From positions 1 through 44,083 of the forward strand of contig NW_021834942.1 of assembly GCF_006345805.1 (NCBI RefSeq): DNA of 44,083 nt, written 5' to 3'. The notes below the pieces were generated by a model. It did no database searches, was not told the DNA's origin, and was given only the letters and a program-made list of their open reading frames with translations. The position numbers and the translations under genes are program-made. This stretch comes from Octopus sinensis. Its lineage: Eukaryota. Positions 252-38,720 of this stretch are shown piece by piece. Every line of letters starts with the position of its first letter. The stretch's first letter is position 1.

Positions 252-358
252 AGCTCTAGATACGTTTTCTGTGGTGTTTACATTTTCAGTTAACTTCTTA
301 AAAGTCGAATATGCGTCCACGGTAAAAATCAGATGAAGTTCAAAGGAATGCGTCCAAC
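252..358 (-). CDS. Exon (phase 1 to 0), start of possible SEA-like domain: [36 protein letters not shown]
   Basis: Acceptor ttttcttttatgttcttgaatag, donor GCT|gtgagt; 107 nt = 2+35 codons, open and phase-compatible with exon 3876-3693. The SEA assignment is only a resemblance. Confidence 0.85.
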
Positions 359-3144: not shown

Positions 3145-6100
3145 TGAGAGAGAGAGATTTGTATATATGTGTGTGTATATCTATGTATATATATATGTAC
3201 ATATAGGTGTATGATATACATACAACACTCACACACATGCGCATATATATTATATATTATATAGTATATATGTGAGTATATGTGTGTGTGCGTTTGTGTT
3301 TGTGTGTGTACACAGTAACTCATTTTATCATATATCAACTATTATCCAATCTTCATATTAAACATCCATCTATAAATAAATCAGAAATATTAAATTTCTA
3401 AATATCTCATAGAGATATGTACGGTGGTGGAGCGATAGAGTGGTGGTTGTATACTGTCAAATTAACGTGACAGCCCTGTAAGGGATTTACACCACTGCTG
3501 TTTAGCCCTAGGAAGCATCGACGCTTCCTGTCGGCCTTGACACATTTAAGGCCGACAGGAAACGTCGATGCTTCCTAGGGCTAAACATCGGTGGTGTTAT
3601 TCCCTTACAGGACTGTCACGTTAAGTTGGCAGTATACAACCACTCTATAAATAAATCAGATGCGATTAAACCAAAGAATTAACAACACTTACCAGGGAAA
3701 TCATTCTTATTGCATAAGTTGTCTCTGCAACAAGCAACACAAGCAGTGCCATTGGACCAATTTTTGCATGTAAGGGAATTGTTTCTGAAAGCTTCAAGGC
3801 AGTTGTTGTATGTGCTGCAGGATCTTTGAAACTTCAATGTACTGCCATCCACTGATAGCCCATATTGGCAGAGAGGCTGTAACAATGAAGATAACAGCCA
3901 TATAATACTTATTTCTTTATTACCCTCAAGGGGCTAAACATAGAGAGGACAAACAAGGACAGAAAAACGGATTATCTCGATTATATCGACCCCAGTGCTT
4001 AACTGGTACTTATTTAATCGACCCCCGAAAGGATGAAAGGCAAAGTCGGCGGAATTTGAACTCAGAACGCAGCGGCGGACGAAATACCGCAAAGCATTTC
4101 GCCCGGCTTGCTAACGATTCTGCCAGCTCGCCGCCTTAACAGCCATATAATGCTACCAAACGAACGTCGACAATAGCAACGCAGGATTTTTAGCATGTAA
4201 AAGTCAAATCTTTACTTCAAAAATTATTCAAGACAACAAATGAAACTGAAACAAAGCTGTTGGGAGATGAGTTTCAGTCATCCCCTGTATAATATATTGA
4301 CATATTCCACTTATACATGATGCGTTATAAATGCTTACACTATCCACCGTTATCATACGGCCGATGAAGTACGGCACATATCAATACCACACCTCTTCCC
4401 CACCCATAATAAAGCGCAAAATATTACAACTTACTCTGATACAAGCAGTATTCTTTAGCCATAGCTGAATAGCGGAATGGACTTTAAATTTTGTGCACAA
4501 AACACACGAAAAACCACGCGTGCAAACCTCATGAATAACAGAAAAAAGACAGCGGCACACGTCACAGAAAGCGGTTGTCTTAATAGGCTCCTCAAGCCTT
4601 GCAATGCAAAAGCAAAGACATGTATAAATTGATACCGGATATATATGTTTCTATTCTACGTGTATATTTTATAGGTACGGAGTAAAATACAATTTTGTCG
4701 CATGAAATTTGGAGAGAAAATCGCCCTCATAACCGGGTAACAACAAACTTGTTAGCATAATACTGTATATCTTCAAAACGCAAATAATGTCAGAAATTGA
4801 AGAGAGTATCACAAAGGAAGGATACCTGTTCTCATACCTTTCGTTCCCATCAACACAACTCTTTCACTATACTACCAGACAGAAGAAAGCTGCCTAGCCT
4901 GCCCGGTAGAAAGAGGTCAGTGAGTCAATCCTCGCGATAGACTTCGCTATTAACCGGATATGTTCCACACGTGATGGCAGCTGTTCCATAACTCTGCAAA
5001 TCAGCTTTGCCCAGACACTGAGCATGAGGAACGATTTCATCTCTCTGCGCGCCTCTCAGACGGCCTCATTTAATATGTTTCTGTACTTGCAGAGTTTAAG
5101 TCGCACCTGAAGCATCTGTTCGCAGCACATGTAAAGCAAAGGCTTCTGCCAATGTCCCATTGAAGACTTCGATCCGAAACTCCTCCGGAACGGACTAGGC
5201 AGTCCATTTCTATCAGCACCCAGAGATTCAGCGAGAATATAGTTACTCTTCTCCGCCGTTAAAACTCTATAAGTTATGGAGAGAAACATCTATCGATTTC
5301 GTTATCCGCATATCTGGGGGGTTTGACCACCTGATGGCATCGTAGATATCAAGGGCAGAGTTTCGCTCTTTGCTTTATTAAGATGGAGCACCTGATGAAC
5401 GGAACACGTCCCTTGCACGACGTTCCAAAGCGATCGCGTGGAAACTGGATCTAGGCACTATTGTCTGGCTAAACAATAACACAAGCAAGGTGAGACTTTG
5501 TCACGTCTGCCAAGATTTCACAGGATCTTTTCAGACCATGTTTGGATAAGACTGGCGACCCTGCTCATTGTTATATCTCAAATTTTGTCCGCCTGGACGT
5601 AAAAAGCTATCCAAGCCCCAAGTAGCTTAACCGGTCTGTAAGTCCAGCATAGCACGACGCCCTTCCCCGGCATGAACATACCTCTCCAGAAGCCGAGCTA
5701 CAAACTCGCAAGATCTCTAACTTGTCTGAGTAGATTTTAAGCCTTGCCATCTTTCCATATAAACTTTGAAAATATAGCAAACTCTTTACCATCGGTGTTA
5801 TCCGATACCATGGCGATGGCGTGGTTGGCATGTGCTGGCAAGGCTTTTGCTGTTTGAAAGTTATGCTCCTCAACTATTCTAACTTCTGTAATGGATCAAC
5901 AGCCAGGACCTACAAGAGAGGCAAGAGGGAGCAACCCTGTTGAACTGATTGAATTTAAGTTTTTTAAGAAGTTAGCCTTAACCATAGTTCAGGTGTTGCA
6001 GTACATTGCAGCGATTCAGCTTGTGAAAATAAACAGGATCGAACTCGCCAGATTTTAGTATACGTTCGAAATAATGATTGTAGACCCAGTCGAAACCTGT

Positions 6101-9100
6101 TGATCAGGACCATGTTTGAAGCCAGTTTTGTTCCATCAATATGATGCATGAGTTGGCAGGTTTCCAAGGTGGACATTTTCGTGATAACATACTCTTGCAC
6201 TTCCTCGACCAGATCACTAAAGGCAAGCACCACCCATTTTGCTAACACCTTGGCTAAACTATTATACTGTGTTTAGCGGAGTTATTTGACAACAATTGTT
6301 AGTTACGTCTCCCATAATGACCTCTTTTCTCAACAGCGTTAACACTCCCCAGCTCATACTGCTAGGGATTCTCCCGTTCAGTAGCCAACTGCAGTAGACG
6401 TCTTTCAAAAGGTCATCATAGAAATCTGTCATGAATTTGTAACACTCGGAAGGCAGACTATGAAACCCGAGCTGTTTATGCCTTGTGCAAGCGCTCGTTA
6501 CCTCCAGTATTTCATCTGCTGCAATCGGCTTTTTTTTCCTGCAACTCATATCTGTGTCGGTAGTTATTGAAGTAAACAATGAAGTACACCTGTCTTCTCC
6601 GATCTACGGTTTGTTCCGAACACTCACGGAAAGTGCAGCTGGAAAGCTGCACATAGTGTTCGGAACCGACCAGCATGTAGCCGTTTCGATCTCTAAAAGA
6701 TCAGATTGTATTTTTGTTGCCACGTTGCTCATCTTCCACACGAGCCGAACGAACAGCTTTTGTTCCTTCATATTTTAGCGAAGAAGCTTCTACTCTTAGA
6801 GCACAGTCTTCTTGCTTTACAAGGAAACATTTGTCAATGGTCAAAGTCGCTACTAGCATGTCGGTCGCGATGCTTCTATCAATTAATTCTCTTCTAATGC
6901 TCATTAGATCTCTCTTCACTCTATTTTCTTCTGTCAGTAACACGTTGCTAAATGCATTCGATTCTCATTTAATCGGCCTCCTAAAGACATCCGACTACCA
7001 ACAACTGATGGTCACTTCCATCAGTTGCTACTTAACGAATTTATTAATCTTGTTCCTGTAAAATTATTCTTGCTCCTTGTCGAGACACTTGTAACCTGCA
7101 GTAACTGTGTTCCCGTTTGAACCTGGATTTAGTTGACCGCGTAGATCAATAATTTGTCTGTTTTGTAGACTTCTTTGAAAAAAAGATCCCACACTCTCCT
7201 TATCCTCTGGCCTAGCACATTACTCTTTCTCAGACGATCTGGATAGCCCACTCTTGTTGTCCGATGTTCACACTGGCGCAGTTGAAAACTTCTAAGCGGG
7301 ATTTTGACGTTTTTGTAACCTCTTCATTGTTATTGCGTTAGTATTGCGTCTAAATGCAGTTCCAAATACCCCTAGTAAATATCAGAACGTCCCTAAAAAA
7401 GCTGCCAGACGTCAGGAGAAATCGAGACGTCCTTTTTTTCTGTTGTAGCATACACAGCCACTCGGCACCCTCGCTGTGCAGTGGTTGTGCTTTCAGATCT
7501 TTGTGCAGCAGGGGCCAAAAGAACTGCTTATACTATGAAATTTAAGGATTTCCAGTATAACAATGCAACCCAATCGCCCAAACACAACATTTTACGAGAT
7601 AAGAATATATTAGCCATCAACTATGAACGTGGGTGCGAGCGGTCCAGAGGTCCTGCCCCGCTAGTCGCTACATTTATGTAGAGGGATTTGTATTCAAGCT
7701 GATTCCTGGTTACGTACATTCATACACCCAACTGAAAGTGATGTTTGCCTGAGACAAAGAGAAAAAAGTCAAGTCTGAAGCTTGTGGTTTCGATTCCCGG
7801 ACCGGTTGATACTTTGTGAATTAAACACGACACTTCCTCATATAGTGTTCCAGTCTGCTCTGTTGTAAACGAGTATCAGCTTTGAGTTGGTCGTCCCTCT
7901 CTCTCTCGCCTTCAATTCTCATATCCTTGGCACCCAACTGAGTCGTGAAATTGGAATACCGAGAGAGTGTTTTCCTTCTGACTACATATATTTCTTTATT
8001 ACCCACAAGGGGCTAAGCATAGAGGGGACAAACACGGACAGACAAAGGGATTAAGTCGATTACATCGACCCCAGTGCGTAACTGGTACTTAATTTATCGA
8101 CCCCGAAAGGATGAAAGGCAAAGTCGACCTCGACGGAATTTGAACTCAGAACGTAGCGACAGACGAAATACCACTAAGCATTTCGCCCGGCGCGCTAACG
8201 TGTCTGCCAGCTCGCCGCCTTAGTCACCGAAAACAATTAGCAAAAGCATGGTTCAAGCTACCTGGTCATACTGAGTTGCTATTGACGGTTATGGACATAT
8301 TTTGATAGAGAGGAGGAAAGTAACATTTCATTTTACCAGTAGTCCTGGACAACTTCTCATTTGCGAATGATCGCAAATCATCCCTGAACATGTTTGACAC
8401 TGCAAATTCTTTTGAAATAAAGTCTTTCCTACAGAATATAAAATAATATAGTGTTGGAATCAATGTATGTTAGATAAATAAAGGAAATAATCAATTATAA
8501 CTATGCACGTCTTTTTTTTTAATTATCTTTGGGAAATGTTTCAGTTTTGTCACAAATTCAACTAAGAAAATCATGCAACCTAATTGCTGTGTTGCTTCTA
8601 TATCCCACTTTCACAAAGACCTGCAATTATCCAAAGAGGGAAGTTACTCCAAGTTATGATTACGCTGTTATAGAGTTAGCTTCCGTTAAAACCTGGGAAT
8701 ATCTTTTAAATTATGTCACAGGCAGCTCCTTCACAGTGTCCTCTCAGAAGAAACCGCCTTAACACTTTCCAAGCGCGACCAACTAAGACTATGTATATCA
8801 TCCAACCACCTTGCTTTGTTCTACTCCTAGGCCCCCAGAGATCTGCTCCTAAGTCCCCGGCACAACGAATCCGTCATTCTTGCACTATTTTCATCTTACG
8901 TCCATAGTACCGGAGCTGTGACTTCTCAATGATCTCATTGCAACCCTTCACTTCTTTATTATTCGGCAGTTAGCTACTTAATTACTTAATTACGAAATGT
9001 GTTTCTTTATCAGTCATTCACTCACTATGCAATGGTTGTCAAAACGTTTCCTCCTCAATAGCAAGTACTCTCTACTCCAGGTTAGTTTTAGATATGTACG

Positions 9101-9529: not shown

Positions 9530-11199
9530 CATGTATGTATGTATGTATGTATATATGTATGTATATATATATGTATGTATATATATGTTATATGGATGGC
9601 GATGGGATTGTGAAAGAGAGAGAACGAAAGATAATAAGAGACAACAATAAAGGAGACGGAGAGAGATGGTATGTGCATGTGTGTATCTGGATATGTGTGT
9701 GCACGCTTTTATACATGCAGTCACTTTGGTGGCCGTGTGCGCGGATCTATGTTTGTGTGGTACAGTTGATTCTGTGAGTGCTTTAGAGAGAATATGAGTG
9801 TTTGTCTCCGTGTGCCGCTGTGTGTGTGTGTATGTGTGTATGCATGTGTGCACGCTGGTTCATGTGTTTAGTGGGTGGGGGGCGTGGTATTTGCGAAGGG
9901 TGTGGATGGTAAAGCGTTCTTTATATACTCTTTCTCTCTTTTTTTTACTCTTTTTACTTGTTTCAGTCATTTGGCTGCGGCCATGCTGGGGCACCGCCTT
10001 TAATCGAGCAACTCGACCACGGGACTTATTCTTTTTGTAAGCCCAGTACTTATTCTATCGGACTCTTTTGCCGAACCACAAAGTAACATGGACATAAACA
10101 CACCAGCATCGGTTGTCAAGCAATGCTAGGGTGACAAACAGACACACAAACACACACATGCATATATATATAAATATGAATATATATATATATATACGAC
10201 GGGCTTCTTTTCAGTTTCCGTCTACTAAATCCACTCACAAGGCTTTGGTCGGCCCGAGGCTATAGTAGAAGACACACATTCCCAAGGTGCCACGCAGTGG
10301 GACTGAACCCGGAACCATGTGGTTTGTAAGCAAGCTACTTACCACACAACCACTCCTAAACCTATAATATATACGACAGGCTTCTTTCAGTTTCCGTCGA
10401 CTAAATCCACTCACAAGGCTTTGGTTGGCCTGAGGCTATAGTAGAAGACACTTGCCCAAGGTACCACGCAGTGTGACTGAACCCGGAACCATGTTGTTGG
10501 TAACCAGCTACTAACCACACAGCCACTCCTGCGCCTTTATCTTTTGGCCCTGATTCAAAACATAATTTGAGTAGCAGAGAATGACCTGAAGTTTTGTTAT
10601 TGGTAAAAGTAAAAACAAACAACAGAAGTAAGGAAGAGTTTACTAACCTTTACATTGTGAATATTTCCTTATAGATATTAATTTATCTTTAGAGCCTAAA
10701 TTTGTGTGACACTTGCCCTGAATTTTCACAGTTCTGTTGTATGTATTGTTTATATAATTTAACATAGCTGGAAGTTGACATCCACACATCATGTCTGTAT
10801 TGTTTCTGAGGTCACTGTAATTATAAGACAACTTTTTAAAGTTATTATCATTATTATTATTATTATTATATTATCATTGTCATTTACTTTTAATCTGCAT
10901 GTTTGATGCAATCACCTGCCGGGGCACACCCAGCGCCCTAGGGCAAGTGAAGGTTAAGAGTTGTTGAAATATAGCTGAAAGCTTGGGGAGGGGAAGTAGA
11001 GATATATCTCCATGTAATGCAAACACAAACATTTACATTGATAGGGTTTTTCTAAGGATGTGGGCAGTACTTGTTAGCACAATCTTTTGGATTTCCTTGA
11101 GACATGGTTTTCCAGGGATATTGTCTAGGTGTTTCTGACATCCCTTTTTTATCATACCTAGGGCACCTACAATAACCTACAATATTATTATTATTATTA

Positions 11200-26890: not shown

Positions 26891-26951
<61 letters not shown>

Positions 26952-27355: not shown

Positions 27356-27389
<34 letters not shown>

Positions 27390-27832: not shown

Positions 27833-27890
<58 letters not shown>

Positions 27891-28039
27891 TATATTATAT
27901 ATAATATATATATATACACACATATGTATACATATATATAGATAAATATACATCTATATTATGTTTGTGACACATGTATATTTACATATATATATATGTA
28001 TGTCAGCATGTGTATGACTACAAACTGCTTTGTGGTGTG

Positions 28040-28071
<32 letters not shown>

Positions 28072-29713
28072 CGAGAGAGAGAGAGTCTGCATGTTTAAAT
28101 CTGCCTCTCTCTCTGCAATTACAAAAATGTTATTGAATGCAACAAAATTCAGTTTACAATTCAGATTCGTCATTTTTCATTTATGTATAGTTATATGTAT
28201 GTGTATATAAGCATTGTATCTTTGCGTTTGCATCTATATTACCAACCCAAACTGTTGCTCCCGCTACATCTGTATACTAAAGGTTTTATCAATGTTAATA
28301 AAATAGAAACAATTGTAGGCTTTATACTGCGAAATCTAATAAACGCAACTGTCTCTATATTTATCGTTTGTTGTCAAAATGTCTGAATTTTCCAGAATTC
28401 TGCCATAGGATATTTCAATTTACTTATCATACAGGAGGAATTCACTTGGGTGTGTATTCTACTTCTTATTACTGGTGCCTAATTGTCGAATATAGTTAGA
28501 TCTGAATCTCTGGATTCCCCTCGTTGTCCTACATGACTTTCCCCGAATCGGGAATTTTGTCTTTAATTGTTAATTGTTACGTTGTTCACATTAATTTTAT
28601 ATAAATCACATCACAATTCAAAACCACAAACACTCATATTCTTAATTATTTTCATACCCGCCCGCGCGCACACACAACACACGCGCACACACACACGCGC
28701 ATACACACAGACAAATTGAAAGTCTGATAGAGAGGATGAAAGAGAAAGCGAAGATAGAAGGGAAGACATTATATAGTAGAATATACAATTAGATTAATAA
28801 TATCAGGAAGATCAAACTTACAAATTGTATAATTTGGTGAGACCTACGAACGATCCATGTTCGATGATCGCGATTTTATTATTGACTAGAATTCTGTAAG
28901 TTGAAAAAGTATGTGAGAAATGGTATAAAAATGATTAGTCACACAAATTTAAATACGCATATGTCTAATAAACTGCATGTAGATGTGGAAGAAAAGGAAG
29001 TCGGAGTGCAAAAATTAGATGAAATGAAGAGAAATGAGGAGTGAAGGTTATGATGATATTGATAATGATGGCTTGTGACGCAGTTGACTGATGGTGACGA
29101 TGATGCTAATGATGATGTCGTTTATGATGATGATGATGAGATGATAATGAGTGTGGTGTTGAGCACGTTGGTGGTCGCGTTCATGGCCATGATGCTTATG
29201 ACGACAATGAAATATAAGAAGTACAAAATAGGATTGAAGCGGAGATTACAAGAAAAATATGAAGTGAAAAATACATATATATATTGTGAAGGATATATAT
29301 AATATATGTCGGTCCCATAGGGGATAATGCTACTGTGTTTATAGCTCCGGAATATCTCCGCTAGCTGTCAAAACGACACACACTTGTGCCTTACGTGTAT
29401 TTGCGAACTAATATCATGGTTCCCGTCTCTGGTTTTACGTAATAAACCAAGGCCCTGATTTCTGGGTAGTTAACTCGTCATCGAAACCTGGGGGTGTGGT
29501 ATCACGTCAGGCTAGAGATGGCAATGTTTTCCTTTCGCAATACTAATCAGACACAGACAGTGTGTCATTAGCCAAGTGGAGAAGAGATCTCCTGAGGCTA
29601 TAAAAAGAAGAAGCATCCTTCACTATGGGACTGATACGTTACGTGTAAATATACTTTACGATTCGTGCCACTACTGTTTACGTTCTCACAGATTTAATAT
29701 TGCTCTTATATAT

Positions 29714-29770
<57 letters not shown>

Positions 29771-30155
29771 GAGAGCGAGAGAGAGAGAGAGAGATAGATA
29801 TATAAAGGGGCAGGCACAGGTTGCTTAGCCACACATCCGAAAAATTAGAAATATCGGTCAAAAAACTGTTTATTTGTATTTTACTATCAGGGCATGCATA
29901 AGTTTTGAAAAAATTACAAAGATCGTTTCAGGTTTGTGTATGCGATCGATAAAGCCGTGGGAACGTGCATTTGCAAAAATCGTTTTTCTTGGAATAGAAA
30001 AAAGTCTATCTTATTTCTTCTTTTGCTGGTTGTCTGAAATTTGGGTTAAATCAGTGTTTCTCAAAGGGGAGGCCTAGGGACGGTCGGACATGTTTTTGAA
30101 ACACTTTGGTTTAATGTTTGACACCCCAGCACCGTCCATGGGAGGGGGGGGTTTG

Positions 30156-30190
<35 letters not shown>

Positions 30191-33100
30191 TACCGGAGTA
30201 AACACATAAATGTGAAACAAGGTGGAAAAAAGGTACTCAAATACCAGTGGTAGAGAGAATATGCTTTATTTAAAGCAGCAGAAAATTCAACAAACCTGTT
30301 ACTCTGAGTTTCACGTTGCCGTTCTTCGGACAGTTTTTGCTAGAATAGAACCGATACGTCAATTCTATCCAGACTAGTATAAACGCTACACCTTTGAAAA
30401 TTGACTTGTTTGATTGGTCCTTTACAAATAACTGTGAATTTTCGAGTGATAAACAAAAAGGAGCTCAAAAATATATATATCACCCAGGCATGTTTGAAGA
30501 CTGCCTAACAAAAATAGAAGAAGTCCTCACAAACCTTGAACAACACTTCATGGGTGACATTAACTTCCCCAATGTGGAATGGCCTGGGGCGGGGCAGATG
30601 CTCCCAGTGATGACACACCATCAGCAGGCACAGGCAGAGTCCCTGCTCCATCTCACAAATGCCTCTTTCATGGAGCAAATAGCTCTGCAACCAACAAGGG
30701 CAGATAATATACTTCACAAACAATATGTATATTATCCATAATGTTAAAGTGATGCCGACAATGAGCTCGGATCACAACATAATAGAGCTGTCTATGTATG
30801 GACCAAAAGCCCCCGTAGACACACAGCCTATACGAAGCATCCACCATCTCTCCAACTTAAACTTTCATAAAGCAAACTGGAAGTTGATTGCGAAAGAGAT
30901 CCTCAAACAGGATTGGCCTAAATGTCTCTCCACACTGGACATTAACATGAAGCACAAACACTTCATGTCCATAATACAAGCCATATGTGACAAATATGTC
31001 CCAGTGTACAGGGCCAGCACACACAAAAACAAAAACAGGATCCCTAGAGAAAGGAGGATTCTTATGAGACGACGGACAATGATTGCGAACCGCCTGAGCA
31101 AGCACACCAAAGGTGGTGAGAAGTCTCGGCTCGAGAGAATGCTAATGGAAATTGAGAAAGTCTGCATCAATCTCATGAAAAGGAGAGAGCAGATAAAGAA
31201 GTTTGGGTAATAGAAAATATAAAATCAAACCCTAAAGCTTTCTTTACGTTTGCCAAAGAGACAGCCACAGTGCACCAGAGAATAGGACCTCTCTTCCAAA
31301 AAGATGGCTCTCTCACAGGAAACCCCACGAGGATAAGTGAAATACTGAACGAACATTTCCAAAGTGTGTTCACTACATCTCTAGGACACAGGCAAGTAAA
31401 CAACCCAGAAGAATTCTTTGCCACTTTACCTGCGTCCAAAGAGGCAAAAATTGAGTACATCAACATTGAAGATGATGATATCACACTAGCCATAGATGAG
31501 ATTGACACAAACTCAGCTGCTGGACCTGATGGATTTCCAGCGATCCTTCTCAAATCGTGCAAACGAGCCCTTGCAAAACCGCTACAGCTTCTTTTTCAGA
31601 GCTTCCTTGCAAGTGGTAAGCTCCCAGTCAAATTGAAAGAGGGTGTAGTATGCCCTATCCATAAGGGAGGTAGCAGAGCAGATGCTGAAAATTATAGGCC
31701 TTTCTCTCTGACCTCACACATCAGCAAAGTCATGGAACGAATAGTCCGCAAGAAACTAATCATGTTCCTTGAAGAAAATGACTTGCTATCTGACACCCAG
31801 CATGGATTTCGGCCAGGCAGAAGCTGCTTAACAAAGCTCCTGCAACACTATGACTGGGTGTTAAAACAGCTACTAAATGGCTCAAATGTGGATGTAATAT
31901 ATCTCGACTTTGCAAAGGCCTTTGATAAAGTCGACCATGGTATGATCTGTCACAAACTGCGTGGTCACGGCATAGGCGGAAAACTTGGAGAGTGGCTGCA
32001 CAACTTCCTAAAAGACAGAAGACAGGCAGTTGTGAGCAATGGAGCCACTTCCAAGGAAACACCAATAACAAGCGGTGTTCCACAGGGCACTGTCTTGGGG
32101 CCACTGCTGTTCATAGTGGCCCTTTCAGACATGCCTTCAGTTGCTACGATGGCCACCCTTGCTAGCTATGCAGATGACACAAAAAATCCCACACAATACA
32201 AAACCCTGAAAATATTGCGCATCTGCAACAGGAGTTGGATAAAATATACAGGTAGGCGGAGGACAACAACATGCAGTTTAATGCAGGTACGTTCCAGGCC
32301 TTGCGTTACCGTCACACAAAGGTAAACGACGTGCAGACTGGATACACTGGCCCAGGAAGAATTGCAATCCCTGAGTCAAAATCAGTGCCTGACCTGGGCA
32401 TTGACATGAGCAATGATGCATCTTTCCAAGTGCATATTACTAATCTGGTGATAAAATGCAAATGGCCAGCTGGATGGATTCTCCGAACTTTCAGAACAAG
32501 AGAGAAGGAGACACTGATGGTCCTCTGGAAAACATTCGTCCTCAGCCGCTTGGACTACTGCTCCCAACTATGGTCACCACACAATATAAAACTAACAGCA
32601 GAACTTGAAGCAATTCAGAGAAGCTACAAAGAAGATTGTCTCAATGTAAAATATCAGCTACTGTGAAAGACTGAAAGTATTAAACCTCTTCTCCCTAGAG
32701 TGGAGGCGGGAGAGATATGCGGTGATATACACATCAGGAAAATCCTGGAGGGTCTTGTCCCAAACTTTGGCATTCAAAGTTACCCCAACCGCAGAACGGG
32801 GCGCCACTGCATGGTGCCAAAGATTCCAACATCACCATCAAAATACAGGTCCAGATACTGCAACAGCTTGGGTTTTAGAGGACCACAGCTCTTTAACATC
32901 CTCCCTAAATGCCTAAGACACTTACATGGTGTGGATGTGGGTTTCTTTAAAACTAAACTGGATCTCTTCTTGTCGGGAGTCCCAGATGAACCTACCACGA
33001 CAGGAGACGCAGATGCGGGCAGCAGTATCGAACTCCCTTGTTGATCAAGTGCCACGTATCAGAGGTGGATTCACATATTAGTGTAGCTCATTCAGCGGTG

Positions 33101-36100: not shown

Positions 36101-38720
36101 GAAGCGATTGCCTGTGAAAAAGGCTGAGCAACGTAGTCCTGAGCGGAAAATACAATTTAAAGCACTTCATAAGCAGCCTCAGAGAAAGCTTGGTTCTCTG
36201 TGATTAGATGTTGCTATTGCGAGGCTTTCGGTACGAGGGCAATACATCACGGAATTGGAGTGCGGTGGAGGATTTCCTGGCTTCACATGTATGTGATGAA
36301 AAACCTGATTTGGGTAGCACCACACCACCTCACTGTGACAAGTGGCCAGAAAGGTATAGGAAGTTACTGAAAAAGAAAGGTGTGTATGTCTTACTACTTT
36401 CATACTAATACAGAGTCTATGATTTCCTTTTGTTTGTCATCTAACCTTATGGTTACTCTTATTTTACGAGAGTGGCAGAAGCTTTTGCGCACTCTTACAT
36501 CCTCACGTGGGACGTATAGTTTATTTATATCAGCCTCTAGGAGATGCATGTAGTGTATCGTGACAGAATTGCTTTGTTTTGATTCGGTGATACACATCTC
36601 ATTCGTGGATCATTTTATGGTATCAAAGCTGCTGCCTAGAGGACCTATATATAAGGTATTCATTGCATCAGTCTTTTCTTCAAATGGAAATAGGTTTTTA
36701 TAGTGGCGGCTCATAAGAATGCGGTGTGACGCGAGAAATCATATCAGCACATTCAATAATAGAAGAGACTAGCCATAACAGTTTTAATATATCGACGGAA
36801 TTAAATGCAGGAAGATAAGGAAAAAAATGCGGTGTTTGGGGATTTCATGAAGGAGATGACCATAATGATGTTCAAAGGATATGAGTTTGTCATAAAATTT
36901 AAAATTAAATACACAGTATTTTACGTAGGATATGGGCGGTTCCGATTAGCGCTATCTTTTGAGTTGCTGCCATTTTGGGGTTTCCTAGTATCTGAGATGG
37001 TATGATTCAGGCCTTTTGCTATAATTCCTCGGGCAACTATGACAACAGGCATTGTTTTACTTCCACATTTTGCTAATTTCTATTTCAAGATCTTTACACT
37101 TGCTCAGTTTTGTAGGTTTTGATAGATACTTTTTTTGTCGATTGGGACAGTTTTAAATGAGGAGGCATGGTTTTTTTCCTGTAGTTTTTCTATATAATGC
37201 CTGTTCTATTCGCATCTATCTTTCTGTCACTTTGAATGGCAAGGTTCTAGAGGTTAAGATGCGATCATCTTCAAGAACTGGAGTGTGTTCGGGTCCCCAA
37301 CCGATTGTATCATGTGGCACGTGTATGTTTTTGCAAATTAACTAGTAAATATGATGTGCTGCTCAATCATGCCTGTTGAGATATTCTGTATGCACAAGAA
37401 GACTGCACATGGAGACAACATGATCAATGGTTTCATTTTGTTGTTTACAAGACATGCTGGGTGACTGCCGTTCTTTAATATGGTAGTTTCTTGTAGGTAG
37501 GCCTTGATCTTGAGCTGCTATATTAAATCCGTCTGTGTCTGATTTTAAGCTAGAAGACACTAAACATTGATGGGTAATGGCTTTATCCACATCGGCACTA
37601 TTAGCTCTCTTTGGGTATTTGCCATTGAGCTGTTTTCTTTGTCATTTATCTGTAAGAATATCTAAGTCAGATTCTTTGCATGTACTTTCATTCGCTTAGC
37701 TTTTTTCTGTGCTTGCTTCTAGTACGTTTAATTCTGGGAATTGTTGTATTTGGAATTCACTTAGATATTTCTTTGCATGCTTTGTTACTTTGTATGACAC
37801 TTTCTTGTTTTCGTGCTTTGAGACAAGTTTTAATATTCAGTCATGAGAGTTGTTTAGGTAGGTGTCACGGTCAATTGTGGCACTATCCATTGTTAATTCC
37901 AATTGTAAATGTTACGGCCACCCTCTTTTCTTTGCAGGTAAAATCGTTCTACATCTGTTTTAGGGTGGTGCATTCTATGCATTGTCAACAATTTTCGTAT
38001 TTTTCTGTCACGATTACATATTTCAATAATTGACCAGTTAATGATATTGAAACTGTAAGTCACGACTTGTACGGCATAGGTACTGATCACTTCGATCCTG
38101 TTTCTTGCATTCAGCTCTGTCTTGAATATTGCTTTTACCCTGCGATAATATTCATCACTGAATATTTGATCATGTCCACTTCAAATATCGATAAGTACAT
38201 GTATCTCTCCGCGTGTTCTAATTCCATTATGACATTCTGAGGGATGTTTCTGTCGTTTTTCCTTTGATAAATGTAGCTTTTGCCCATTTATCGAGGTAAA
38301 ATTGCAACGTGATATCATCAAAGAATTGTTTAGTATCTCCCGCCCAAGACGAAACACTAAAGGACTATATATTTATCCACACATTTCAGGAATAAATATA
38401 CATATGACTATATACGCACTTTTCACAATATACCAAACAGTGATGTAGAACACAAAGACTTATGTAAACACACATCGTCACACACAAACACGCTCAACTC
38501 ACACACACTCACATACATATATATATAGAGAGAGATAATGTGAGGTAGAGAAGGGCAACCGAAGGTTAAGAAAGTAAGATGGAAAGGTATTAAATTTCAG
38601 GAAATATATACTCAGGAATATAGTATGAACAAGACTGGTTCAACTTACAATTCACCTAAGTTTGGAAGATTTGCAAACGATCCATTTTCAATTTTCACGA
38701 TTGCATTACTGGAAAGATCT
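252..38720 (-). CDS. Multi-exon gene (5' and 3' ends outside window): extracellular LRR x>=6 - LRRCT - Ly6/uPAR (three-finger)-like - possible SEA-like protein
   Basis: Ten exons found by hand on the minus strand, all with AG acceptors and GT donors, and with splice phases chaining 2-2-2-2-2-2-2-1-0-1-0. Nine give a continuous stop-free frame: [48 protein letters not shown]/[71-nt copy]/[84 protein letters not shown]...[18 protein letters not shown]...CPGLL/PLCQYG...[25 protein letters not shown]...VSRA. About 10 N-x-S/T sequons. Confidence 0.9.
1089..1215 (+). mobile_element. Degenerate SINE family A
   Basis: ttcagtcccactgtgtggcacattgagcaagtgtctt...gtggatttgatagac matches the family A body; flanked by (TA)n. 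Confidence 0.7.
1264..1575. repeat. Inverted duplication (~65 bp arms) around a ~170 bp core
   Basis: atttaataaataaaacatatgcata...catacctacatctatatg (1264-1330) is the reverse complement of ~1510-1575. Confidence 0.75.
1911..2237. mobile_element. MITE-like element with 41-bp terminal inverted repeats
   Basis: 1911-1951 attaattacagaaatagacatagtctctgacagctgtttcg versus the reverse complement of 2197-2237 (3 mismatches); non-coding AT-rich interior. Confidence 0.7.
2275..2630. repeat. Compound (TA)n/(TACA)n/(CA)n microsatellite
   Basis: Directly visible; source of the spurious Y/I/M/C/V ORFs. Confidence 0.95.
2640..2805 (+). mobile_element. Degenerate SINE family A
   Basis: aattcagtcctactgcgtagcaccttaggcaagtgt...ggccgatcaaaccc...aaactgaaaaaagccc matches family A. 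Confidence 0.65.
3435..3648. repeat. Long near-perfect palindrome (~100-bp arms, 9-nt loop)
   Basis: The left arm ends ...cttcctgtcggcctt (3538), the loop is gacacattt, and the right arm starts aaggccgacaggaaac; pairing extends to atagagtgg/ccactctat with few mismatches. Confidence 0.92.
3693..3876 (-). CDS. Exon (phase 0 to 1), C-terminal half of Ly6/uPAR three-finger-like domain
   Basis: Acceptor cttcattgttacag, donor CCTG|gtaagt; 184 nt = 61 codons+1; ends in the LU signature CCRDNLCN. Confidence 0.92.
3907..4136 (-). mobile_element. tRNA-derived SINE (family B) with 15-bp target-site duplication
   Basis: Head AAGGCGGCGAGCTGGCAGAATCGTTAGC...GAGTTCAAATTCC and central GCCTTTCATCCTTTCGGGGGTCGAT; TSD taacagccatataat at 3892-3906 and 4137-4151. 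Confidence 0.9.
4720..7500 (-). mobile_element. Heavily degenerate Tx1/L1-clade LINE ORF2 (APE endonuclease to C-terminus)
   Basis: Translated fragments align by eye with ORF2 at 41641-44083 and 13140-13715, e.g. VAVYA...[44 protein letters not shown]...[11 protein letters not shown] and [10 protein letters not shown]; many stops and frameshifts. Confidence 0.8.
7991..8222 (-). mobile_element. tRNA-derived SINE (family B)
   Basis: High similarity to 3907-4136 over its full length. Confidence 0.88.
8337..8428 (-). CDS. Exon (phase 1 to 0), N-terminal half of Ly6/uPAR-like domain: (G)[30 protein letters not shown]
   Basis: Acceptor tattttatattctgtag, donor CTG|gtaaaa; 92 nt = 2+30 codons; supplies the LxCxxC start that the downstream CCxxxxCN exon needs, and both phases match. 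Confidence 0.9.
8560..8900 (+). mobile_element. Possible ancient Gypsy-type LTR retrotransposon RNase H relic
   Basis: [33 protein letters not shown] resembles the Gypsy RH motif YxxxELE...hxYLxGxxFTVxTDHKPL; very degenerate. Confidence 0.35.
9940..10140 (-). mobile_element. SINE (family C) with CR1-like 3' tail
   Basis: The minus strand ends ggcggtgccccagcatggccgcagcc...tgaaacaagtaaaaagag, matching the 3' end of the LINE at ~33097-33125. Confidence 0.75.
10195..10357 (-). mobile_element. SINE family A
   Basis: Near-identical to 19-180. Confidence 0.88.
10372..10532 (-). mobile_element. SINE family A (tandem with the previous copy)
   Basis: Near-identical to 19-180 and 10195-10357. Confidence 0.88.
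10648..10814 (-). CDS. Exon (phase 2 to 1), last LRR plus LRR C-terminal cap
   Basis: Acceptor gtcttataattacag, donor AAAG|gttagt; 167 nt = 1+55 codons+1; [14 protein letters not shown]...GKC...SQCK has the four-Cys LRRCT pattern (CxC...C...C). Confidence 0.9.
10880..11185 (-). mobile_element. 5'-truncated R4/Dong-like (REL) LINE 3' end
   Basis: [47 protein letters not shown] followed by a 3' UTR and a (TAA)n tail at 10846-10880. Confidence 0.85.
11267..13988 (+). mobile_element. Internally deleted Tx1-clade LINE (5'UTR-ORF1-ORF2 C-terminal remnant-3'UTR), flanked by (ATT)n on both sides
   Basis: ORF1 is homologous to 39712-41584 and joined at ~13140 directly to the ORF2 C-terminal Cys region ([15 protein letters not shown]...CPRC...ETVLH...C). 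AATAAA at 13977; (ATT)n at 11184-11266 and 13989-14235. Confidence 0.88.
11491..13143 (+). CDS. Tx1-like ORF1 (gag-like; RRM-like segment, degenerate zinc knuckle, poly-Q and Pro/Thr linker), 551 aa open frame
   Basis: ATG at 11491; [13 protein letters not shown]; [21 protein letters not shown] (CCHC with the second Cys replaced by Ser). Confidence 0.8.
   Translation: MSLKRAAGSSLLATPPPPQEEKILSAVPNRPFQAVKGKENITMERAEKQSVPNKNKKDGVSCDVILDFPPLPSINVIVPKGEEGNDMNKREINKETKIEENSKGFASAAKQISEEIQVSMEDIKMAKELLRKEGNSVFLNTPQQLIHDTNKKTIFYKVFEKKTKRLVNATPQQLEMALKPIWGQMSYVTRGKRFGTVEVRFPTEEQARAHAISPLQNEHLFLVPMYLGRKVQKITINTIPHKLNISWLVAAILYGIEDTATILNVRRVREKNWSGMGIEMLVQSQQENINAIHDFVILLDGIRLNVTVEGRKPKCFLSSSESHLKRDCPIQKKRMEEYSKRQQQQQQQQQQKQQKQHETPKAATLPTPSPAPRRTTPPPATTTTKPTPTPVPRRSTAAPSTATGAAAPPIPAEPTTFRPAAEADPSTIPLPDEEYSDCASSDSNNGEWSTVLPKKKRRRKQNDTQGKHEQIVLPNIKNNNNNTYSQQQTTITLSTPLLPLPLPQTQTHTDTITSINTRNQELVEYLKEKTSTNITDFVIPTQNTPPAHIL
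14240..15058 (-). mobile_element. 5'-truncated R4/Dong-like LINE with intact C-terminal CCHC and restriction-like endonuclease
   Basis: [47 protein letters not shown] and [11 protein letters not shown]; 3' UTR then (TAA)n; the 5' end fuses into (TAA)n at ~15058. Confidence 0.9.
15398..18792 (-). mobile_element. Near full-length R4/Dong-like LINE, frameshifted, lacking the REL domain
   Basis: N-terminal [11 protein letters not shown]...KLANVRRNI; RT motifs [41 protein letters not shown] and YMDDIKL; thumb and CCHC up to HVVSG, then ~50 nt and (TAA)n; (TAA)n also at the 5' side. Confidence 0.9.
19030..19110 (-). mobile_element. Short 3'-end fragment of another (TAA)n-tailed retroelement
   Basis: The minus strand ...ccccagtgctactttgatggaatgcactgctctctcactg runs into (AAT)n at 18795-19030; family recognised from memory only. 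Confidence 0.5.
19640..20080 (+). mobile_element. Degenerate R2/R4-type RT fragment
   Basis: [39 protein letters not shown] and LVKAVNTW across frameshifts. Confidence 0.7.
20300..20368 (-). CDS. LRR exon (69 nt, phase 2-2): [22 protein letters not shown](I)
   Basis: Acceptor ttatctttgattctttcag, donor GAGAT|gtatgt; joins the LRRCT exon to read INEIDLRNN. Confidence 0.92.
20815..21357 (-). mobile_element. Mariner (Tc1/mariner) transposon relic, 5' part
   Basis: From ATG 21170: [25 protein letters not shown]...[15 protein letters not shown]...SGRPMTS...[12 protein letters not shown]...EELQLKRVA (mariner HTH region); TIR-like TACATGAGGTACCTAAAAGTAACCGAA at ~21325-21357. Confidence 0.8.
21544..21821. 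mobile_element. MITE-like element with ~70-bp imperfect TIRs, TA-flanked
   Basis: ataatttacaagataagggcaaaag...ccaaatatgccgaaaaaaagacaaaaa versus its reverse complement at ~21752-21818. Confidence 0.75.
23030..23101 (-). CDS. LRR exon (72 nt, phase 2-2): [23 protein letters not shown](V)
   Basis: Acceptor ttctctcccaaattacag, donor GT|gtaagt; open frame. Confidence 0.92.
24189..24260 (-). CDS. LRR exon (72 nt, phase 2-2): [23 protein letters not shown](L)
   Basis: Acceptor ttgtctctcaaattacag, donor TT|gtaagt; open frame. Confidence 0.9.
26422..26492 (-). pseudogene. LRR exon copy with a 1-nt deletion (71 nt): pseudo-exon or assembly error
   Basis: ATT GAA CAT in sibling copies reads ATT CA CAT here; acceptor ctcttccaacttacag and donor gtaagt are intact. 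Confidence 0.75.
28822..28893 (-). CDS. LRR exon (72 nt, phase 2-2): [23 protein letters not shown](L)
   Basis: Acceptor tactttttcaacttacag, donor TT|gtaagt; open frame. Confidence 0.9.
30190..30395 (-). mobile_element. Probable Penelope-like element terminal (pLTR) segment
   Basis: Contains a minimal hammerhead on the same strand as the Penelope ORF at 34240-35105 and is separated from it by the CR1 insertion. Confidence 0.55.
30292..30337 (-). ncRNA. Minimal type I hammerhead ribozyme motif
   Basis: Minus strand: stem I CUGU / core CCGAAGA / stem II ACG-GCAA-CGU / GAAA / stem III CUC-A-GAG / UA / stem I ACAG; cleavage triplet GUA; U4C core variant. Confidence 0.75.
30397..33158 (+). mobile_element. 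5'-truncated CR1/L2-group LINE (APE C-terminus plus RT), frameshifted
   Basis: [70 protein letters not shown] and [11 protein letters not shown]; 3' tail (TAAGGATTT)2. Confidence 0.92.
33160..35105 (-). mobile_element. Penelope-like element relic: RT thumb, GIY-YIG endonuclease (~34240-34700) and long 3' region
   Basis: [38 protein letters not shown]...[16 protein letters not shown] and [11 protein letters not shown]...[13 protein letters not shown]. Confidence 0.88.
35110..35660 (+). mobile_element. Degenerate, internally deleted Tx1-like ORF2 fragment
   Basis: [29 protein letters not shown] and SREVVWW...LKFHLK match the RT and C-terminal motifs of the other Tx1 copies. Confidence 0.65.
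36900..38335 (-). mobile_element. Degenerate R4/Dong-like LINE (RT end, thumb, CCHC, REL)
   Basis: [53 protein letters not shown] and [12 protein letters not shown]. Confidence 0.85.
38649..38720 (-). CDS. LRR exon (72 nt, phase 2-2): [23 protein letters not shown](L)
   Basis: Acceptor gaattatctttcag, donor TT|gtaagt; canonical 24-residue extracellular LRR. Confidence 0.92.

What the first reader, a model, noticed from the sequence alone, without database searches (positions are those of the whole stretch)
252..38720. Unusual domain architecture: LRR solenoid + LRRCT + Ly6/uPAR three-finger + possible SEA-like module
Seen: phase-compatible exons put an LRRCT directly before a complete three-finger-like domain (LQCQTC...CCRDNLCN), then a segment resembling the start of a SEA domain, with ~10 N-glycosylation sequons. 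Established: LRRCT is usually followed by Ig/FN3, TM/TIR or a GPCR body, and LU domains usually occur alone or in LU tandems. I do not recognise a named family with this fusion. Inference: a possibly undescribed mollusc or cephalopod cell-surface or secreted recognition protein (immune, chemotactile or skin role).
Basis: partly seen in the sequence, partly recalled or inferred. Interest (0 to 1): 0.78.

Follow-up and report, generated by a model that had tools for sequence, protein, structure and literature searches.

The report
Octopus adhesion-GPCR ectodomain: LRR, Ly6, SEA
The window holds the outer, ligand-binding part of an octopus adhesion-type G-protein-coupled receptor gene, in which a leucine-rich-repeat arc is followed by a Ly6/uPAR "three-finger" module and the start of a SEA domain. 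The fusion is real and conserved in molluscs and annelids, but it belongs to a receptor family that is already annotated and already known to be expanded in octopus.

Summary
On the minus strand, nine intact exons with canonical splice sites and compatible phases (38720 to 252) encode 5 LRRs, an LRRCT-like cap, a complete 12-cysteine Ly6/uPAR (LU) domain and the first exon of a SEA domain, with 10 N-glycosylation sequons.

The window is a whole unplaced contig of Octopus sinensis (VCDQ01010816.1). NCBI already has a partial model with exactly these limits ("LRR-containing protein egg-6-like, partial").

The gene is not a stand-alone new protein family. About 45 octopus paralogs, one intron-free transcript contig, and full-length proteins from abalone, whelk, scallop, oyster, zebra mussel, a sea slug and tubeworms show the complete order. 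That order is signal peptide, LRRNT, LRRs, LRRCT, LU, SEA, HormR, GAIN/GPS and a 7TM.

The 7TM is closest to ADGRG6/ADGRG2, and ADGRG6 has the same SEA-HormR-GAIN stalk. The octopus expansion was published by Ritschard et al. 2019 ("group 3"), which reported LRRs but not LU or SEA. LU-bearing adhesion-GPCR fragments have been noted in starfish.

Two points remain of interest. The LU and SEA modules of this receptor family are uncharacterised. The window also carries a recent four-fold tandem duplication of a one-LRR exon. The contig ends before HormR/GAIN/7TM, so receptor status of this particular copy is inferred.

The parts
38649..38720 (-). LRR exon (72 nt, phase-2 introns on both sides): [23 protein letters not shown]. 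It is the first exon of the NCBI partial model. Its 5' phase requires an upstream exon that is not in the window.
   Evidence: matches paralog contig L001 103-210; part of P0002
28822..28893 (-). LRR exon, copy A of the tandem duplication (72 nt, intact): [23 protein letters not shown]. Not used in the NCBI model.
26422..26492 (-). LRR pseudo-exon, copy B of the tandem duplication: 71 nt, with a 1-nt deletion that shifts the frame
24189..24260 (-). LRR exon, copy C (72 nt): [23 protein letters not shown]
23030..23101 (-). LRR exon, copy D (72 nt): [23 protein letters not shown]
22400..30200 (-). Four-copy tandem segmental duplication. Start-to-start spacing is 1159, 2232 and 2399 nt, and block identities to the reference copy mostly range from 62 to 98%. 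Each unit carries one of the LRR exons above.
   Evidence: the near-identical second contig L002 is collinear with the window over its whole length at 99.8% identity
20300..20368 (-). Last LRR exon before the cap (69 nt): [22 protein letters not shown]. It corresponds to the conserved '...YEDGAFLFLPSI...' repeat of all paralogs. Not used in the NCBI model.
   Evidence: matches L001 3025-3123
10648..10814 (-). LRRCT-like cap exon: [55 protein letters not shown] (CxC...C...C)
   Evidence: 62% identical to L001 4782-4961
8337..8428 (-). LU (Ly6/uPAR) domain exon 1: [31 protein letters not shown]
3693..3876 (-). LU domain exon 2: PLCQYG...[17 protein letters not shown]. With exon 1 it forms a 276-nt cassette bounded by phase-1 introns on both sides.
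252..358 (-). SEA domain exon 1 (first strand and first helix): [36 protein letters not shown], with a canonical GTGAGT donor. The rest of the domain lies beyond the contig end.

Best explanation
Window positions 252-38720 (minus strand) are the middle of a large gene for an adhesion G-protein-coupled receptor. It belongs to a lophotrochozoan family related to ADGRG6/ADGRG2 that is tandemly expanded in octopus. The family's order is signal peptide, LRRNT, a variable number of LRRs, LRRCT, one Ly6/uPAR (LU) domain, SEA, HormR, GAIN with its GPS cleavage site, 7TM, and sometimes a cytoplasmic Death domain. The window encodes only LRRs, LRRCT, LU and the first SEA exon. Both ends of the gene run off this 44-kb contig.

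Shown: the exon structure, the domain identities, membership of this family by homology, and the full architecture in relatives.

Inferred mechanism, from established adhesion-GPCR biology. The glycosylated LRR arc and the LU three-finger module form the distal ligand- or partner-binding head. SEA and HormR form the stalk. Binding or mechanical pull on this N-terminal fragment exposes the tethered agonist that follows the GPS cut. Relatives carry a CxC(D/N)HL|T(S/N)F..LL motif at this site. The exposed agonist then activates the 7TM.

The number of LRRs is varied by duplication and skipping of single-LRR exons of 72 nt. These exons are frame-neutral because phase-2 introns flank them on both sides. 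The window shows this process in action, with four recent tandem copies, one of them already broken.
For: Exons and phases.

Identity of the locus: the window is O. sinensis contig VCDQ01010816.1, and NCBI model P0002 joins the same exons.

Collinearity: paralog contig L001 carries LRR, LRR, LRRCT, LU1, LU2, SEA1, SEA2, SEA3, HRM1 and HRM2 in order on one strand.

Family: about 45 octopus paralogs were found at E from 1e-136 to 1e-23.

Domains in relatives:
- Overlapping models carry GPS (P0039, 6e-15) and 7tm_2 (P0034).
- Full-length single models with LRR_8 + GPS + 7tm_2 exist in O. bimaculoides (P0059, P0065, P0061), Haliotis, Dreissena, Nucella and Ylistrum. The annelid Lamellibrachia model has them too, with its 7TM cut short at the end of the model. 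The LU-SEA-HRM profile matches between the LRRs and the GPS in these proteins.
- Transcript contig L004 encodes the whole architecture in one uninterrupted ORF.

LU domain: PDB profile hits are LYPD1 1.1e-6, LYPD6 1.4e-6, LYPD6B 9e-4 and SLURP1 0.017. All 12 Cys align to LYPD1. The top Foldseek hits are mostly three-finger proteins, led by Lynx2. Weak Pfam hits fall mainly in the uPAR/Ly6/toxin/activin-receptor group.

SEA domain: the AlphaFold model has pLDDT 87 with strand-helix-strand-strand-helix-strand order. Pfam SEA matches 4 of 13 family members, best 1.3e-6. Haliotis scores 5.5e-5 in the full protein. The best PDB hit is a mucin-type SEA (1ivz), and the ADGRF1 SEA fragment also appears.

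7TM and GAIN: the closest solved structures are ADGRG6 (1.3e-87) and ADGRG2 (2e-85).

Literature: an octopus-specific adhesion-GPCR expansion with LRRs in 5 of 22 members and a Death domain in one, expressed in axial nerve cord, suckers and skin (PMC6408891). ADGRG6 has the order CUB-PTX-SEA-HormR-GAIN (PMC11475505).
Against: The window itself contains no HormR, GAIN or 7TM exon, and no signal peptide or LRRNT exon. Receptor status of this particular paralog therefore rests on homology only.

Pfam does not detect the LU or SEA domain in the window's own sequence.

The AlphaFold model of the LU domain is of low confidence (pLDDT 47.5).

Foldseek places the octopus SEA-like model only among generic ferredoxin-like folds, with no SEA structure among the 50 hits listed.

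HormR scores in octopus paralogs are below Pfam's threshold (15-17 bits against a cut-off of 26.2).

Many octopus gene models are short or end without a 7TM. Some copies may therefore be truncated or encode secreted products.

No expression data for this locus were available.
Confidence: 0.8

Rival explanations
1. This copy, or a major isoform of it, encodes a soluble or otherwise 7TM-less LRR-LRRCT-LU protein, such as a decoy or secreted binding protein, rather than a receptor.
For: The contig ends 251 nt after SEA exon 1. Read-through of that exon's donor gives ...NVSRAVS followed by a stop. The O. bimaculoides model P0007 ('decorin-like isoform X2') ends by a similar read-through directly after the homologous exon. 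Several O. vulgaris and O. sinensis models end after HormR with an ...SSSTGNGTEDRTAETNF tail instead of GAIN/7TM.
Against: The SEA exon has an intact canonical GTGAGT donor. It encodes only one strand and one helix of a domain that needs three exons, as seen in paralog L001. All full-length relatives and the transcript contig continue to a 7TM. Many of the short models come from contigs that end or from frameshifts in the assembly.
Confidence: 0.13
2. The locus is a decaying duplicate (pseudogene fragment) of the expanded family, stranded among retrotransposons.
For: One of the four duplicated LRR exons is frameshifted. The last LRR has lost a codon and is skipped by NCBI's model. LINE elements flank and invade the gene. 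The paralog on L001 has a frameshift in its SEA exon.
Against: Nine exons keep open frames, canonical splice sites, all 16 cysteines and the LRR consensus across junctions. The second, near-identical contig is collinear with the window over its whole length at 99.8% identity. A frameshifted extra copy of a frame-neutral exon can simply be skipped.
Confidence: 0.06
3. The LRR exons and the LU exons belong to two neighbouring genes that only appear phase-compatible.
For: NCBI's model of the paralog (P0001) starts at a methionine inside the LRRCT exon and has no LRRs.
Against: The LRR exons lie upstream on the same strand in the same order in both contigs. More than 20 models and one transcript contig join LRRs to LU. 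The junction reads as a perfect LRR leading into the cap.
Confidence: 0.01

Closest known systems
ADGRG6 (GPR126) and ADGRG2, vertebrate adhesion GPCRs of group VIII
   Same: The closest solved 7TM/GAIN sequences to the family are ADGRG6 (1.3e-87) and ADGRG2 (2e-85). ADGRG6 has the same membrane-proximal order SEA-HormR-GAIN-7TM (PMC11475505). Relatives keep the GPS motif and a tethered-agonist sequence (TNFALLMD in non-cephalopods). NCBI names most members 'ADGRG6-like'.
   Different: The distal head is LRRNT-LRR-LRRCT-LU instead of CUB-PTX. The octopus SEA is short and divergent, and no furin or GSVVV-type cleavage motif is evident. One member has a cytoplasmic Death domain.
ADGRA2/ADGRA3 (GPR124/GPR125)
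   Same: An LRR block with an LRRCT cap at the N-terminus of an adhesion GPCR, followed further on by HormR-GAIN-7TM. One O. bimaculoides member is auto-named ADGRA3.
   Different: ADGRA has an Ig domain after the LRRCT (from my own knowledge of the family). Here an LU domain plus a SEA domain occupy that position. No ADGRA sequence appears among the 60 best PDB hits listed, so the comparison with ADGRA itself was not made; the best-matching 7TMs are of the ADGRG type.
Octopus-specific adhesion-GPCR expansion, 'group 3' of Ritschard et al. 2019 (PMC6408891)
   Same: Most likely the same gene family. It consists of octopus-only paralogs with GPS and an adhesion-type 7TM, LRRs in some members and a Death domain in one. 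The genes are co-localised and expressed in axial nerve cord, suckers and skin. P0059 shows LRR + GPS + 7tm_2 + Death.
   Different: That study was built on 7TM signatures and reports neither LU nor SEA. I did not map accession numbers one-to-one, so identity with group 3 is inferred from the shared unusual features.
Ly6/uPAR single-domain proteins LYPD1 (Lynx2), LYPD6 and LYPD6B
   Same: The LU domain of the family matches them over its full length at E around 1e-6, with all cysteines aligned and the C-terminal CCxxxLCN motif.
   Different: Those are small GPI-anchored or secreted one-domain proteins. Here the LU domain is an internal module of a multidomain receptor, encoded by a two-exon cassette bounded by phase-1 introns.
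Starfish LU-bearing adhesion-GPCR fragments LyAr2/LyAp2 (PMC9410279, PMC11595613)
   Same: A single LU domain, most similar to Lynx2/LYPD6, in the extracellular N-terminus of a protein that NCBI annotates as an adhesion GPCR.
   Different: Echinoderm, not lophotrochozoan. Whether it has the LRR and SEA neighbours is not stated, and I could not fetch the sequences. No echinoderm was among the 20 of 58 profile hits that I traced.

Membership tests
Adhesion GPCR (class B2) | Secretin-type seven-transmembrane domain | not testable with these tools
   Not present in the window, because the contig ends 251 nt after SEA exon 1. It is present in relatives: 7tm_2 at 1e-23 to 6e-52 in P0059, P0065, P0061, P0079, P0080, P0085, P0090 and P0096.
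Adhesion GPCR (class B2) | GAIN domain with GPS autoproteolysis motif directly before the 7TM | not testable with these tools
   Not in the window. In relatives, GPS scores 2e-11 to 1.5e-15, GAIN or GAIN subdomain A is found in Haliotis and Dreissena, and the motif CSC(D/N)HLTSF is visible in P0039 and P0059.
Adhesion GPCR (class B2) | The window's protein is homologous over its whole length to the N-terminal region of proven members | tested here: met
   Profile searches link the window's LRRCT-LU-SEA segment to full-length receptors. The profile matches residues 271-545 of P0059, between its LRRs and its GPS.
Hormone-receptor motif (HormR/HRM) | Cysteine and tryptophan pattern; Pfam PF02793 | tested here: inconclusive
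   Absent from the window. Octopus paralogs score 15-17 bits against a cut-off of 26.2. The annelid member scores 30.3 bits, above the cut-off. Two phase-compatible HRM exons are present on paralog contig L001.
Ly6/uPAR (LU, three-finger) domain | 8-10+ cysteines in the LU spacing, with N-terminal LxCxxC and C-terminal CCxxxxCN | tested here: met
   The window has LQCQTC...CCRDNLCN with 12 Cys. All 12 align with the 12 Cys of LYPD1. Ten Cys are invariant across molluscs and annelids.
Ly6/uPAR (LU, three-finger) domain | Significant sequence-profile similarity to known LU domains | tested here: met
   Family profile A6, whose first row is the window's sequence, hits LYPD1 1.1e-6, LYPD6 1.4e-6, LYPD6B 8.9e-4 and SLURP1 0.017. 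These are the only hits. Pfam UPAR_LY6_2 scores 1.5e-4 for one member. The window's sequence on its own gets no Pfam hit.
Ly6/uPAR (LU, three-finger) domain | Three-finger beta fold | tested here: inconclusive
   The AlphaFold model has pLDDT of only 47.5. Foldseek nevertheless ranks Lynx2 first (prob 0.99, E 0.07), followed mostly by three-finger proteins: cobratoxin, BMPR1A, TGF-beta receptor I, LYPD6B and uPAR. No hit is below 1e-3.
SEA domain | Alpha/beta sandwich with strand-helix-strand-strand-helix-strand order | tested here: met
   The model of paralog P0003's domain, built on a family alignment that includes the window's exon, has pLDDT 87 and pTM 0.79. Its elements are E3-12, H22-33, E39-46, E51-60, H65-77 and E92-95. 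The window encodes only the first strand and helix.
SEA domain | Sequence-profile similarity to SEA (PF01390) | tested here: inconclusive
   Four of 13 family members hit SEA, best 1.3e-6. Haliotis scores 23.7 bits against a cut-off of 26.4. The best PDB profile hit is the mucin-type SEA 1ivz (E 0.01), and an ADGRF1 SEA fragment scores 0.017. Octopus members alone give no SEA hit, and Foldseek finds only generic ferredoxin-like folds.
SEA domain | G|SVVV-type autoproteolysis motif between strands 2 and 3 (present only in some SEA domains) | tested here: not met
   Octopus paralogs have CGS/CGL/CGN followed by polar residues, not GSVVV. The region is not in the window. This motif is not required for membership.
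LRR solenoid with LRRCT cap | LxxLxLxxNxL repeats; Pfam LRR_8 | tested here: met
   LRR_8 scores 5.7e-34 over three stretches. Each repeat is encoded by one exon, and the consensus reads across junctions.
LRR solenoid with LRRCT cap | C-terminal cap with the CxC...C...C pattern after the last repeat | tested here: inconclusive
   The four-Cys pattern MMCGC...GKC...SQC is present and conserved in the octopus paralogs examined. Non-cephalopod members have the canonical NP.QC.C form. UniRef labels paralog P0032 'LRRCT domain-containing'. Pfam LRRCT gives no hit at E<=1.

The most novel reading that the evidence does not exclude
The Lynx/LYPD-like LU module built into this sucker- and nerve-cord-expressed receptor family may be a functional partner-binding site for Cys-loop (nicotinic-type) receptors, including the octopus chemotactile receptors. 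Free Lynx proteins bind nicotinic receptors in this way. That would couple contact chemosensation or cholinergic synapses to adhesion-GPCR signalling. The exon-by-exon LRR duplication seen in the window would then diversify a second binding surface among paralogs. Nothing here tests binding. The idea rests only on two things: LYPD1/LYPD6 are the closest known LU domains, and the published expression is in suckers, skin and axial nerve cord.
Probability: 0.05. Interest if true: 0.8.

Novelty: new variant of a known kind. Interest (0 to 1): 0.4.

Why it matters
Adhesion GPCRs are defined by what their ectodomains bind. The vertebrate families do not include an LRR-LU-SEA head.

This work shows that a conserved mollusc and annelid receptor family has exactly this head. 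Automatic pipelines label the family 'ADGRG6-like', 'slit-like', 'decorin-like' or 'LYPD1-like'. The result gives a correct architecture to dozens of fragmented octopus gene models.

It also adds two unreported modules (LU and SEA) to the octopus-specific expansion that has been linked to suckers and the arm nerve cord.

Finally, it documents a concrete mechanism for varying repeat number among paralogs: tandem duplication of frame-neutral one-repeat exons.

It is useful annotation and a lead for receptor deorphanisation, not a new kind of system.

Tried and rejected
1. Regular-expression search for a canonical LRRCT (NPxxCxC...W) found nothing. The cap is divergent and was located only through the paralog.
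2. Pfam on the window's spliced protein and on its LU domain alone gave no LU, LRRCT or SEA hit, even at E<=1.
3. A first homology search with the LU domain alone found a single protein. A two-sequence profile was needed to reach the family.
4. The AlphaFold model of the LU domain from 19 close paralogs was poor (pLDDT 47.5). Its Foldseek ranking is suggestive only.
5. Foldseek with the good SEA-like model returned only generic ferredoxin-like folds, with no SEA structure. The octopus-only SEA profile found nothing relevant in the PDB. Only the alignment that includes non-cephalopod sequences linked the domain to SEA.
6. A sensitive tblastn search with seven LRR-rich or full-length relatives found no further exons in the window. 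There was no LRRNT, signal peptide, SEA exon 2 or 3, HormR, GAIN or 7TM.
7. The extra 1.1 kb at the 3' end of the second contig L002 holds no further exon.
8. I first considered an ADGRA (GPR124/125)-type receptor because of the LRR-LRRCT-...-HormR order. I dropped it as the closest relative because the 7TM and GAIN match ADGRG6/G2 best and a SEA domain precedes HormR.
9. Looking up the genomic place of P0059 returned nothing.

Full report
WHAT IS IN THE SEQUENCE

Reading that strand, I found ten exon-like segments, nine of them intact, with canonical AG...GT boundaries and polypyrimidine tracts.

There are five intact one-repeat LRR exons:
- 38720-38649
- 28893-28822
- 24260-24189
- 23101-23030
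- 20368-20300

The first four are 72 nt and the last is 69 nt. A sixth copy at 26492-26422 is 71 nt and frameshifted.

The remaining exons are:
- a cap exon, 10814-10648
- two exons for the cysteine-rich domain, 8428-8337 and 3876-3693
- a last exon, 358-252

The phases fit throughout. Phase-2 introns lie between the LRR exons, a phase-1 intron lies between the cap and the Cys-rich domain, a phase-0 intron lies inside that domain, and a phase-1 intron follows it. The LxxLxLxxN consensus reads correctly across every LRR junction, for example ...SSINE|I|DLRNN.

The spliced product is a single open frame of 302 aa with 10 N-x-S/T sequons and 16 cysteines. No other exon of this gene could be found in the window with sensitive tblastn.

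WHERE IT COMES FROM

The window is the complete contig VCDQ01010816.1 of the Octopus sinensis assembly GCA_006345805.1, in reverse orientation. NCBI's partial gene model on it spans exactly 252-38720.

Its 255-aa product (P0002, 'leucine-rich repeat-containing protein egg-6-like, partial') is identical to my splice except that it leaves out exons 28893-28822 and 20368-20300. A second contig (L002) is 99.8% identical and collinear, most likely the other haplotype.

Both ends of the gene run off the contig. The first LRR exon starts in mid-codon, and the last exon ends at an intact donor 251 nt from the contig end. Upstream of the first exon there is only a LINE on the opposite strand: an endonuclease domain at 41641-42144 and reverse transcriptase at 42771-44081, which runs to the contig end.

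DOMAIN IDENTITIES

LRR. Pfam LRR_8 scores 5.7e-34.

Cap. The four-cysteine pattern MMCGC...GKC...SQC follows the last repeat. It is conserved in the octopus paralogs examined and is canonical (NP.QC.C) in non-cephalopod relatives. Pfam's LRRCT model does not score it, so I call it LRRCT-like by motif and position.

LU domain. The window's sequence alone gets no Pfam hit. A profile of octopus paralogs puts LYPD1 first in the PDB (E=0.036) with all 12 cysteines aligned, followed by two activin-receptor ectodomains.

A profile that adds gastropod, bivalve and annelid members, with the window's sequence as its first row, hits only LU proteins:
- LYPD1, 1.1e-6
- LYPD6, 1.4e-6
- LYPD6B, 8.9e-4
- SLURP1, 0.017

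All of these matches cover the whole domain. Single members reach UPAR_LY6_2 at 1.5e-4.

The AlphaFold model is poor (pLDDT 47.5). Even so, its top Foldseek matches are mostly three-finger proteins, led by Lynx2. I regard the LU assignment as established by sequence and supported, but not proven, by structure.

SEA. The window has only the first exon ([12 protein letters not shown]...ENVSRA). In paralogs this exon is the first strand and helix of a ~100-residue module. That module models confidently (pLDDT 87) as strand-helix-strand-strand-helix-strand.

Foldseek sees only generic ferredoxin-like folds, and the octopus-only profile finds nothing relevant. With non-cephalopod members added, the picture changes:
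- Pfam SEA matches 4 of 13 members, best 1.3e-6.
- Haliotis scores 5.5e-5 in the context of the full protein.
- The best PDB hit is a mucin-type SEA domain, and an ADGRF1 SEA fragment also appears.

So this is a divergent SEA domain. No GSVVV-type self-cleavage motif is evident in the octopus copies.

WHAT THE GENE IS

The LU domain alone retrieved one protein, an O. sinensis paralog on a 15-kb contig. That contig carries, in the same order and on one strand:
- two LRR exons
- the cap exon
- LU exons 1 and 2
- SEA exons 1-3
- two phase-compatible exons with a hormone-receptor (HormR) motif

This is shown.

A two-sequence profile then found about 45 paralogs in O. sinensis, O. vulgaris and O. 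bimaculoides. They carry a mixture of automatic names: 'adhesion GPCR G6-like', 'slit homolog-like', 'decorin-like', 'LYPD1-like' and 'uncharacterized'. Overlapping models extend the order to GAIN/GPS (6e-15) and a secretin-type 7TM.

A profile of LU-SEA-HormR was scored against 1.84 billion representative proteins and gave only 58 hits. Among them are full-length single models with LRR_8, the LU-SEA-HormR match, GPS and 7tm_2, from these species:
- O. bimaculoides (P0059, P0065, P0061)
- Haliotis
- Nucella
- Dreissena
- Ylistrum
- Saccostrea
- Plakobranchus

The tubeworm Lamellibrachia model has the same parts but its 7TM is cut short. Paralvinella is represented by a 455-aa N-terminal fragment. 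P0059 also carries a Death domain.

A 4.2-kb contig from a public sequencing run carries the whole architecture in one uninterrupted ORF. Each LRR is a separate exon in the genome, so this contig must be a spliced transcript.

The GAIN-7TM part is closest to ADGRG6 (1.3e-87) and ADGRG2 (2e-85). ADGRG6 is the vertebrate receptor with the same SEA-HormR-GAIN stalk (PMC11475505).

HOW IT PROBABLY WORKS

By homology, the window encodes the distal head of an adhesion GPCR. The glycosylated LRR arc and the LU three-finger module are both classical protein-binding surfaces. They would engage a ligand or a partner on another cell or in the matrix, and SEA and HormR would form the stalk. Force or binding on this N-terminal fragment would expose the tethered agonist behind the GPS cut and activate the 7TM.

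These last steps are established for vertebrate adhesion GPCRs and inferred here. The cleavage motif and a conserved TNFALLMD/TSFALL sequence are visible in relatives.

The LU cassette (276 nt) and the SEA cassette are each bounded by phase-1 introns. Some models lack one or the other (P0026 and P0030 lack LU; P0006 and P0024 lack SEA). Cassette skipping is therefore possible, but transcripts were not examined.

THE TANDEM LRR EXONS

Between 22.4 and 30.2 kb, four copies of a 1.2-2.4-kb unit each carry one 72-nt LRR exon. The exons are 60-63 of 72 nt identical to each other and 46-48 of 72 identical to the first LRR exon. One copy has lost a base.

The paralog contig has no LRR exon in the corresponding interval. 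Paralogs range from about 2 to about 13 LRRs. Because these exons are frame-neutral, duplication and skipping change repeat number without breaking the frame. This is a plausible source of the variation among paralogs.

COMPARISON WITH WHAT IS KNOWN

Ritschard et al. 2019 described an octopus-specific expansion of adhesion GPCRs ('group 3') with GPS and 7TM, LRRs in 5 of 22 sequences and a Death domain in one. The genes are co-localised and expressed in axial nerve cord, suckers and skin (PMC6408891). The features match this family, although I did not map accession numbers. That paper mentions neither Ly6/LU nor SEA.

LU domains inside proteins annotated as adhesion GPCRs have been noted in starfish, with Lynx2/LYPD6 as the closest relatives (PMC9410279 and PMC11595613). 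A review of LU-domain proteins that I checked does not mention GPCRs or leucine-rich repeats.

VERDICT

The interpretation needs one correction. This is not a stand-alone new surface protein. It is the N-terminal part of a member of an already annotated adhesion-GPCR family, conserved in lophotrochozoans and expanded in octopus.

Three things remain new in a modest way:
- the explicit LRR-LRRCT-LU-SEA-HormR-GAIN-7TM architecture
- the firm LU and SEA assignments
- the exon-level LRR duplication

For this particular copy, receptor status is inferred, because the contig stops. A 7TM-less isoform or a decaying copy cannot be excluded.

Noticed in passing
window 22400-30200: Four tandem copies of a 1.2-2.4-kb unit (spacing 1159, 2232 and 2399 nt), each carrying one 72-nt LRR exon. 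Copy B (26492-26422) has a 1-nt deletion. The orthologous interval of the paralog contig L001 has no such exons.
   Followed up: yes
window 39709-44083 (+ strand): A LINE-type retrotransposon on the strand opposite to the gene. It has a long ORF1-like frame at 39709-41581, an endonuclease domain at 41641-42144 (Exo_endo_phos, 9e-11) and reverse transcriptase at 42771-44081 (RVT_1, 3e-30). It runs off the contig end, which is probably why the assembly breaks here.
   Followed up: partly
window 14335-18454 (- strand): A second retroelement lies inside the intron between the last LRR exon and the cap exon. It has RVT_1 at 16042-16842 (3e-22) and is interrupted by long (ATT)n/(TTA)n arrays at 13991-14234, 15056-15396 and 18793-19029.
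   Followed up: partly
L002 (VCDQ01005335.1, 45222 nt): A second contig of the same assembly is 99.8% identical and collinear with the whole window and encodes the identical partial protein. It is most likely an uncollapsed haplotype.
   Followed up: yes
L001 8114-8205: In the O. sinensis paralog LOC118760947, the first SEA exon has a 1-nt frameshift relative to the window and other paralogs. As a result, NCBI's 160-aa model ends in ...IFNQHLRAS. This may be an assembly indel or a real disabling mutation.
   Followed up: partly
L001 6842-7687: Six tandem copies (141-nt period, 98% identical) of the acceptor region and first codons of LU exon 2 lie directly upstream of the real exon. This is another very recent micro-duplication at an exon boundary in this family.
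   Followed up: partly
paralog proteins P0009, P0011, P0014, P0015, P0026, P0035, P0044: Several O. vulgaris and O. sinensis models end after HormR with a second, half-length SEA-like segment and a tail ...SSSTGNGTEDRTAETNF instead of GAIN/7TM. They could be an alternative 3' end (a secreted isoform) or chimeric models across tandem genes.
   Followed up: no
paralog proteins P0026, P0030 (no LU); P0006, P0024 (no SEA): Some gene models lack exactly the LU cassette or exactly the SEA cassette. Both cassettes are bounded by phase-1 introns, so the frame is kept. This suggests alternative splicing or loss of modules between paralogs.
   Followed up: no
window 252-249 and downstream (minus strand): Read-through of the donor of SEA exon 1 adds only Val-Ser and then a stop (...NVSRAVS*). 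The O. bimaculoides model P0007 (isoform X2) ends by a similar read-through. A short secreted isoform is therefore conceivable.
   Followed up: partly
window 85-255, 10238-10435, 10414-10536: A repeated short element whose translation reads ...SGCVVSSL(L/F)TNHMV(P/L)GSVP(L/R)RGTLG... occurs several times. It lies next to the SEA exon and in the intron downstream of the cap exon, and is probably a SINE-like repeat.
   Followed up: no
P0059 (O. bimaculoides XP_014788728.1), residues 1203-1277: A cytoplasmic Death domain (3e-6) follows the 7TM and a long (STSQQ)n low-complexity tail. This is unusual for an adhesion GPCR and matches the single Death-domain member mentioned by Ritschard et al. 2019.
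   Followed up: no
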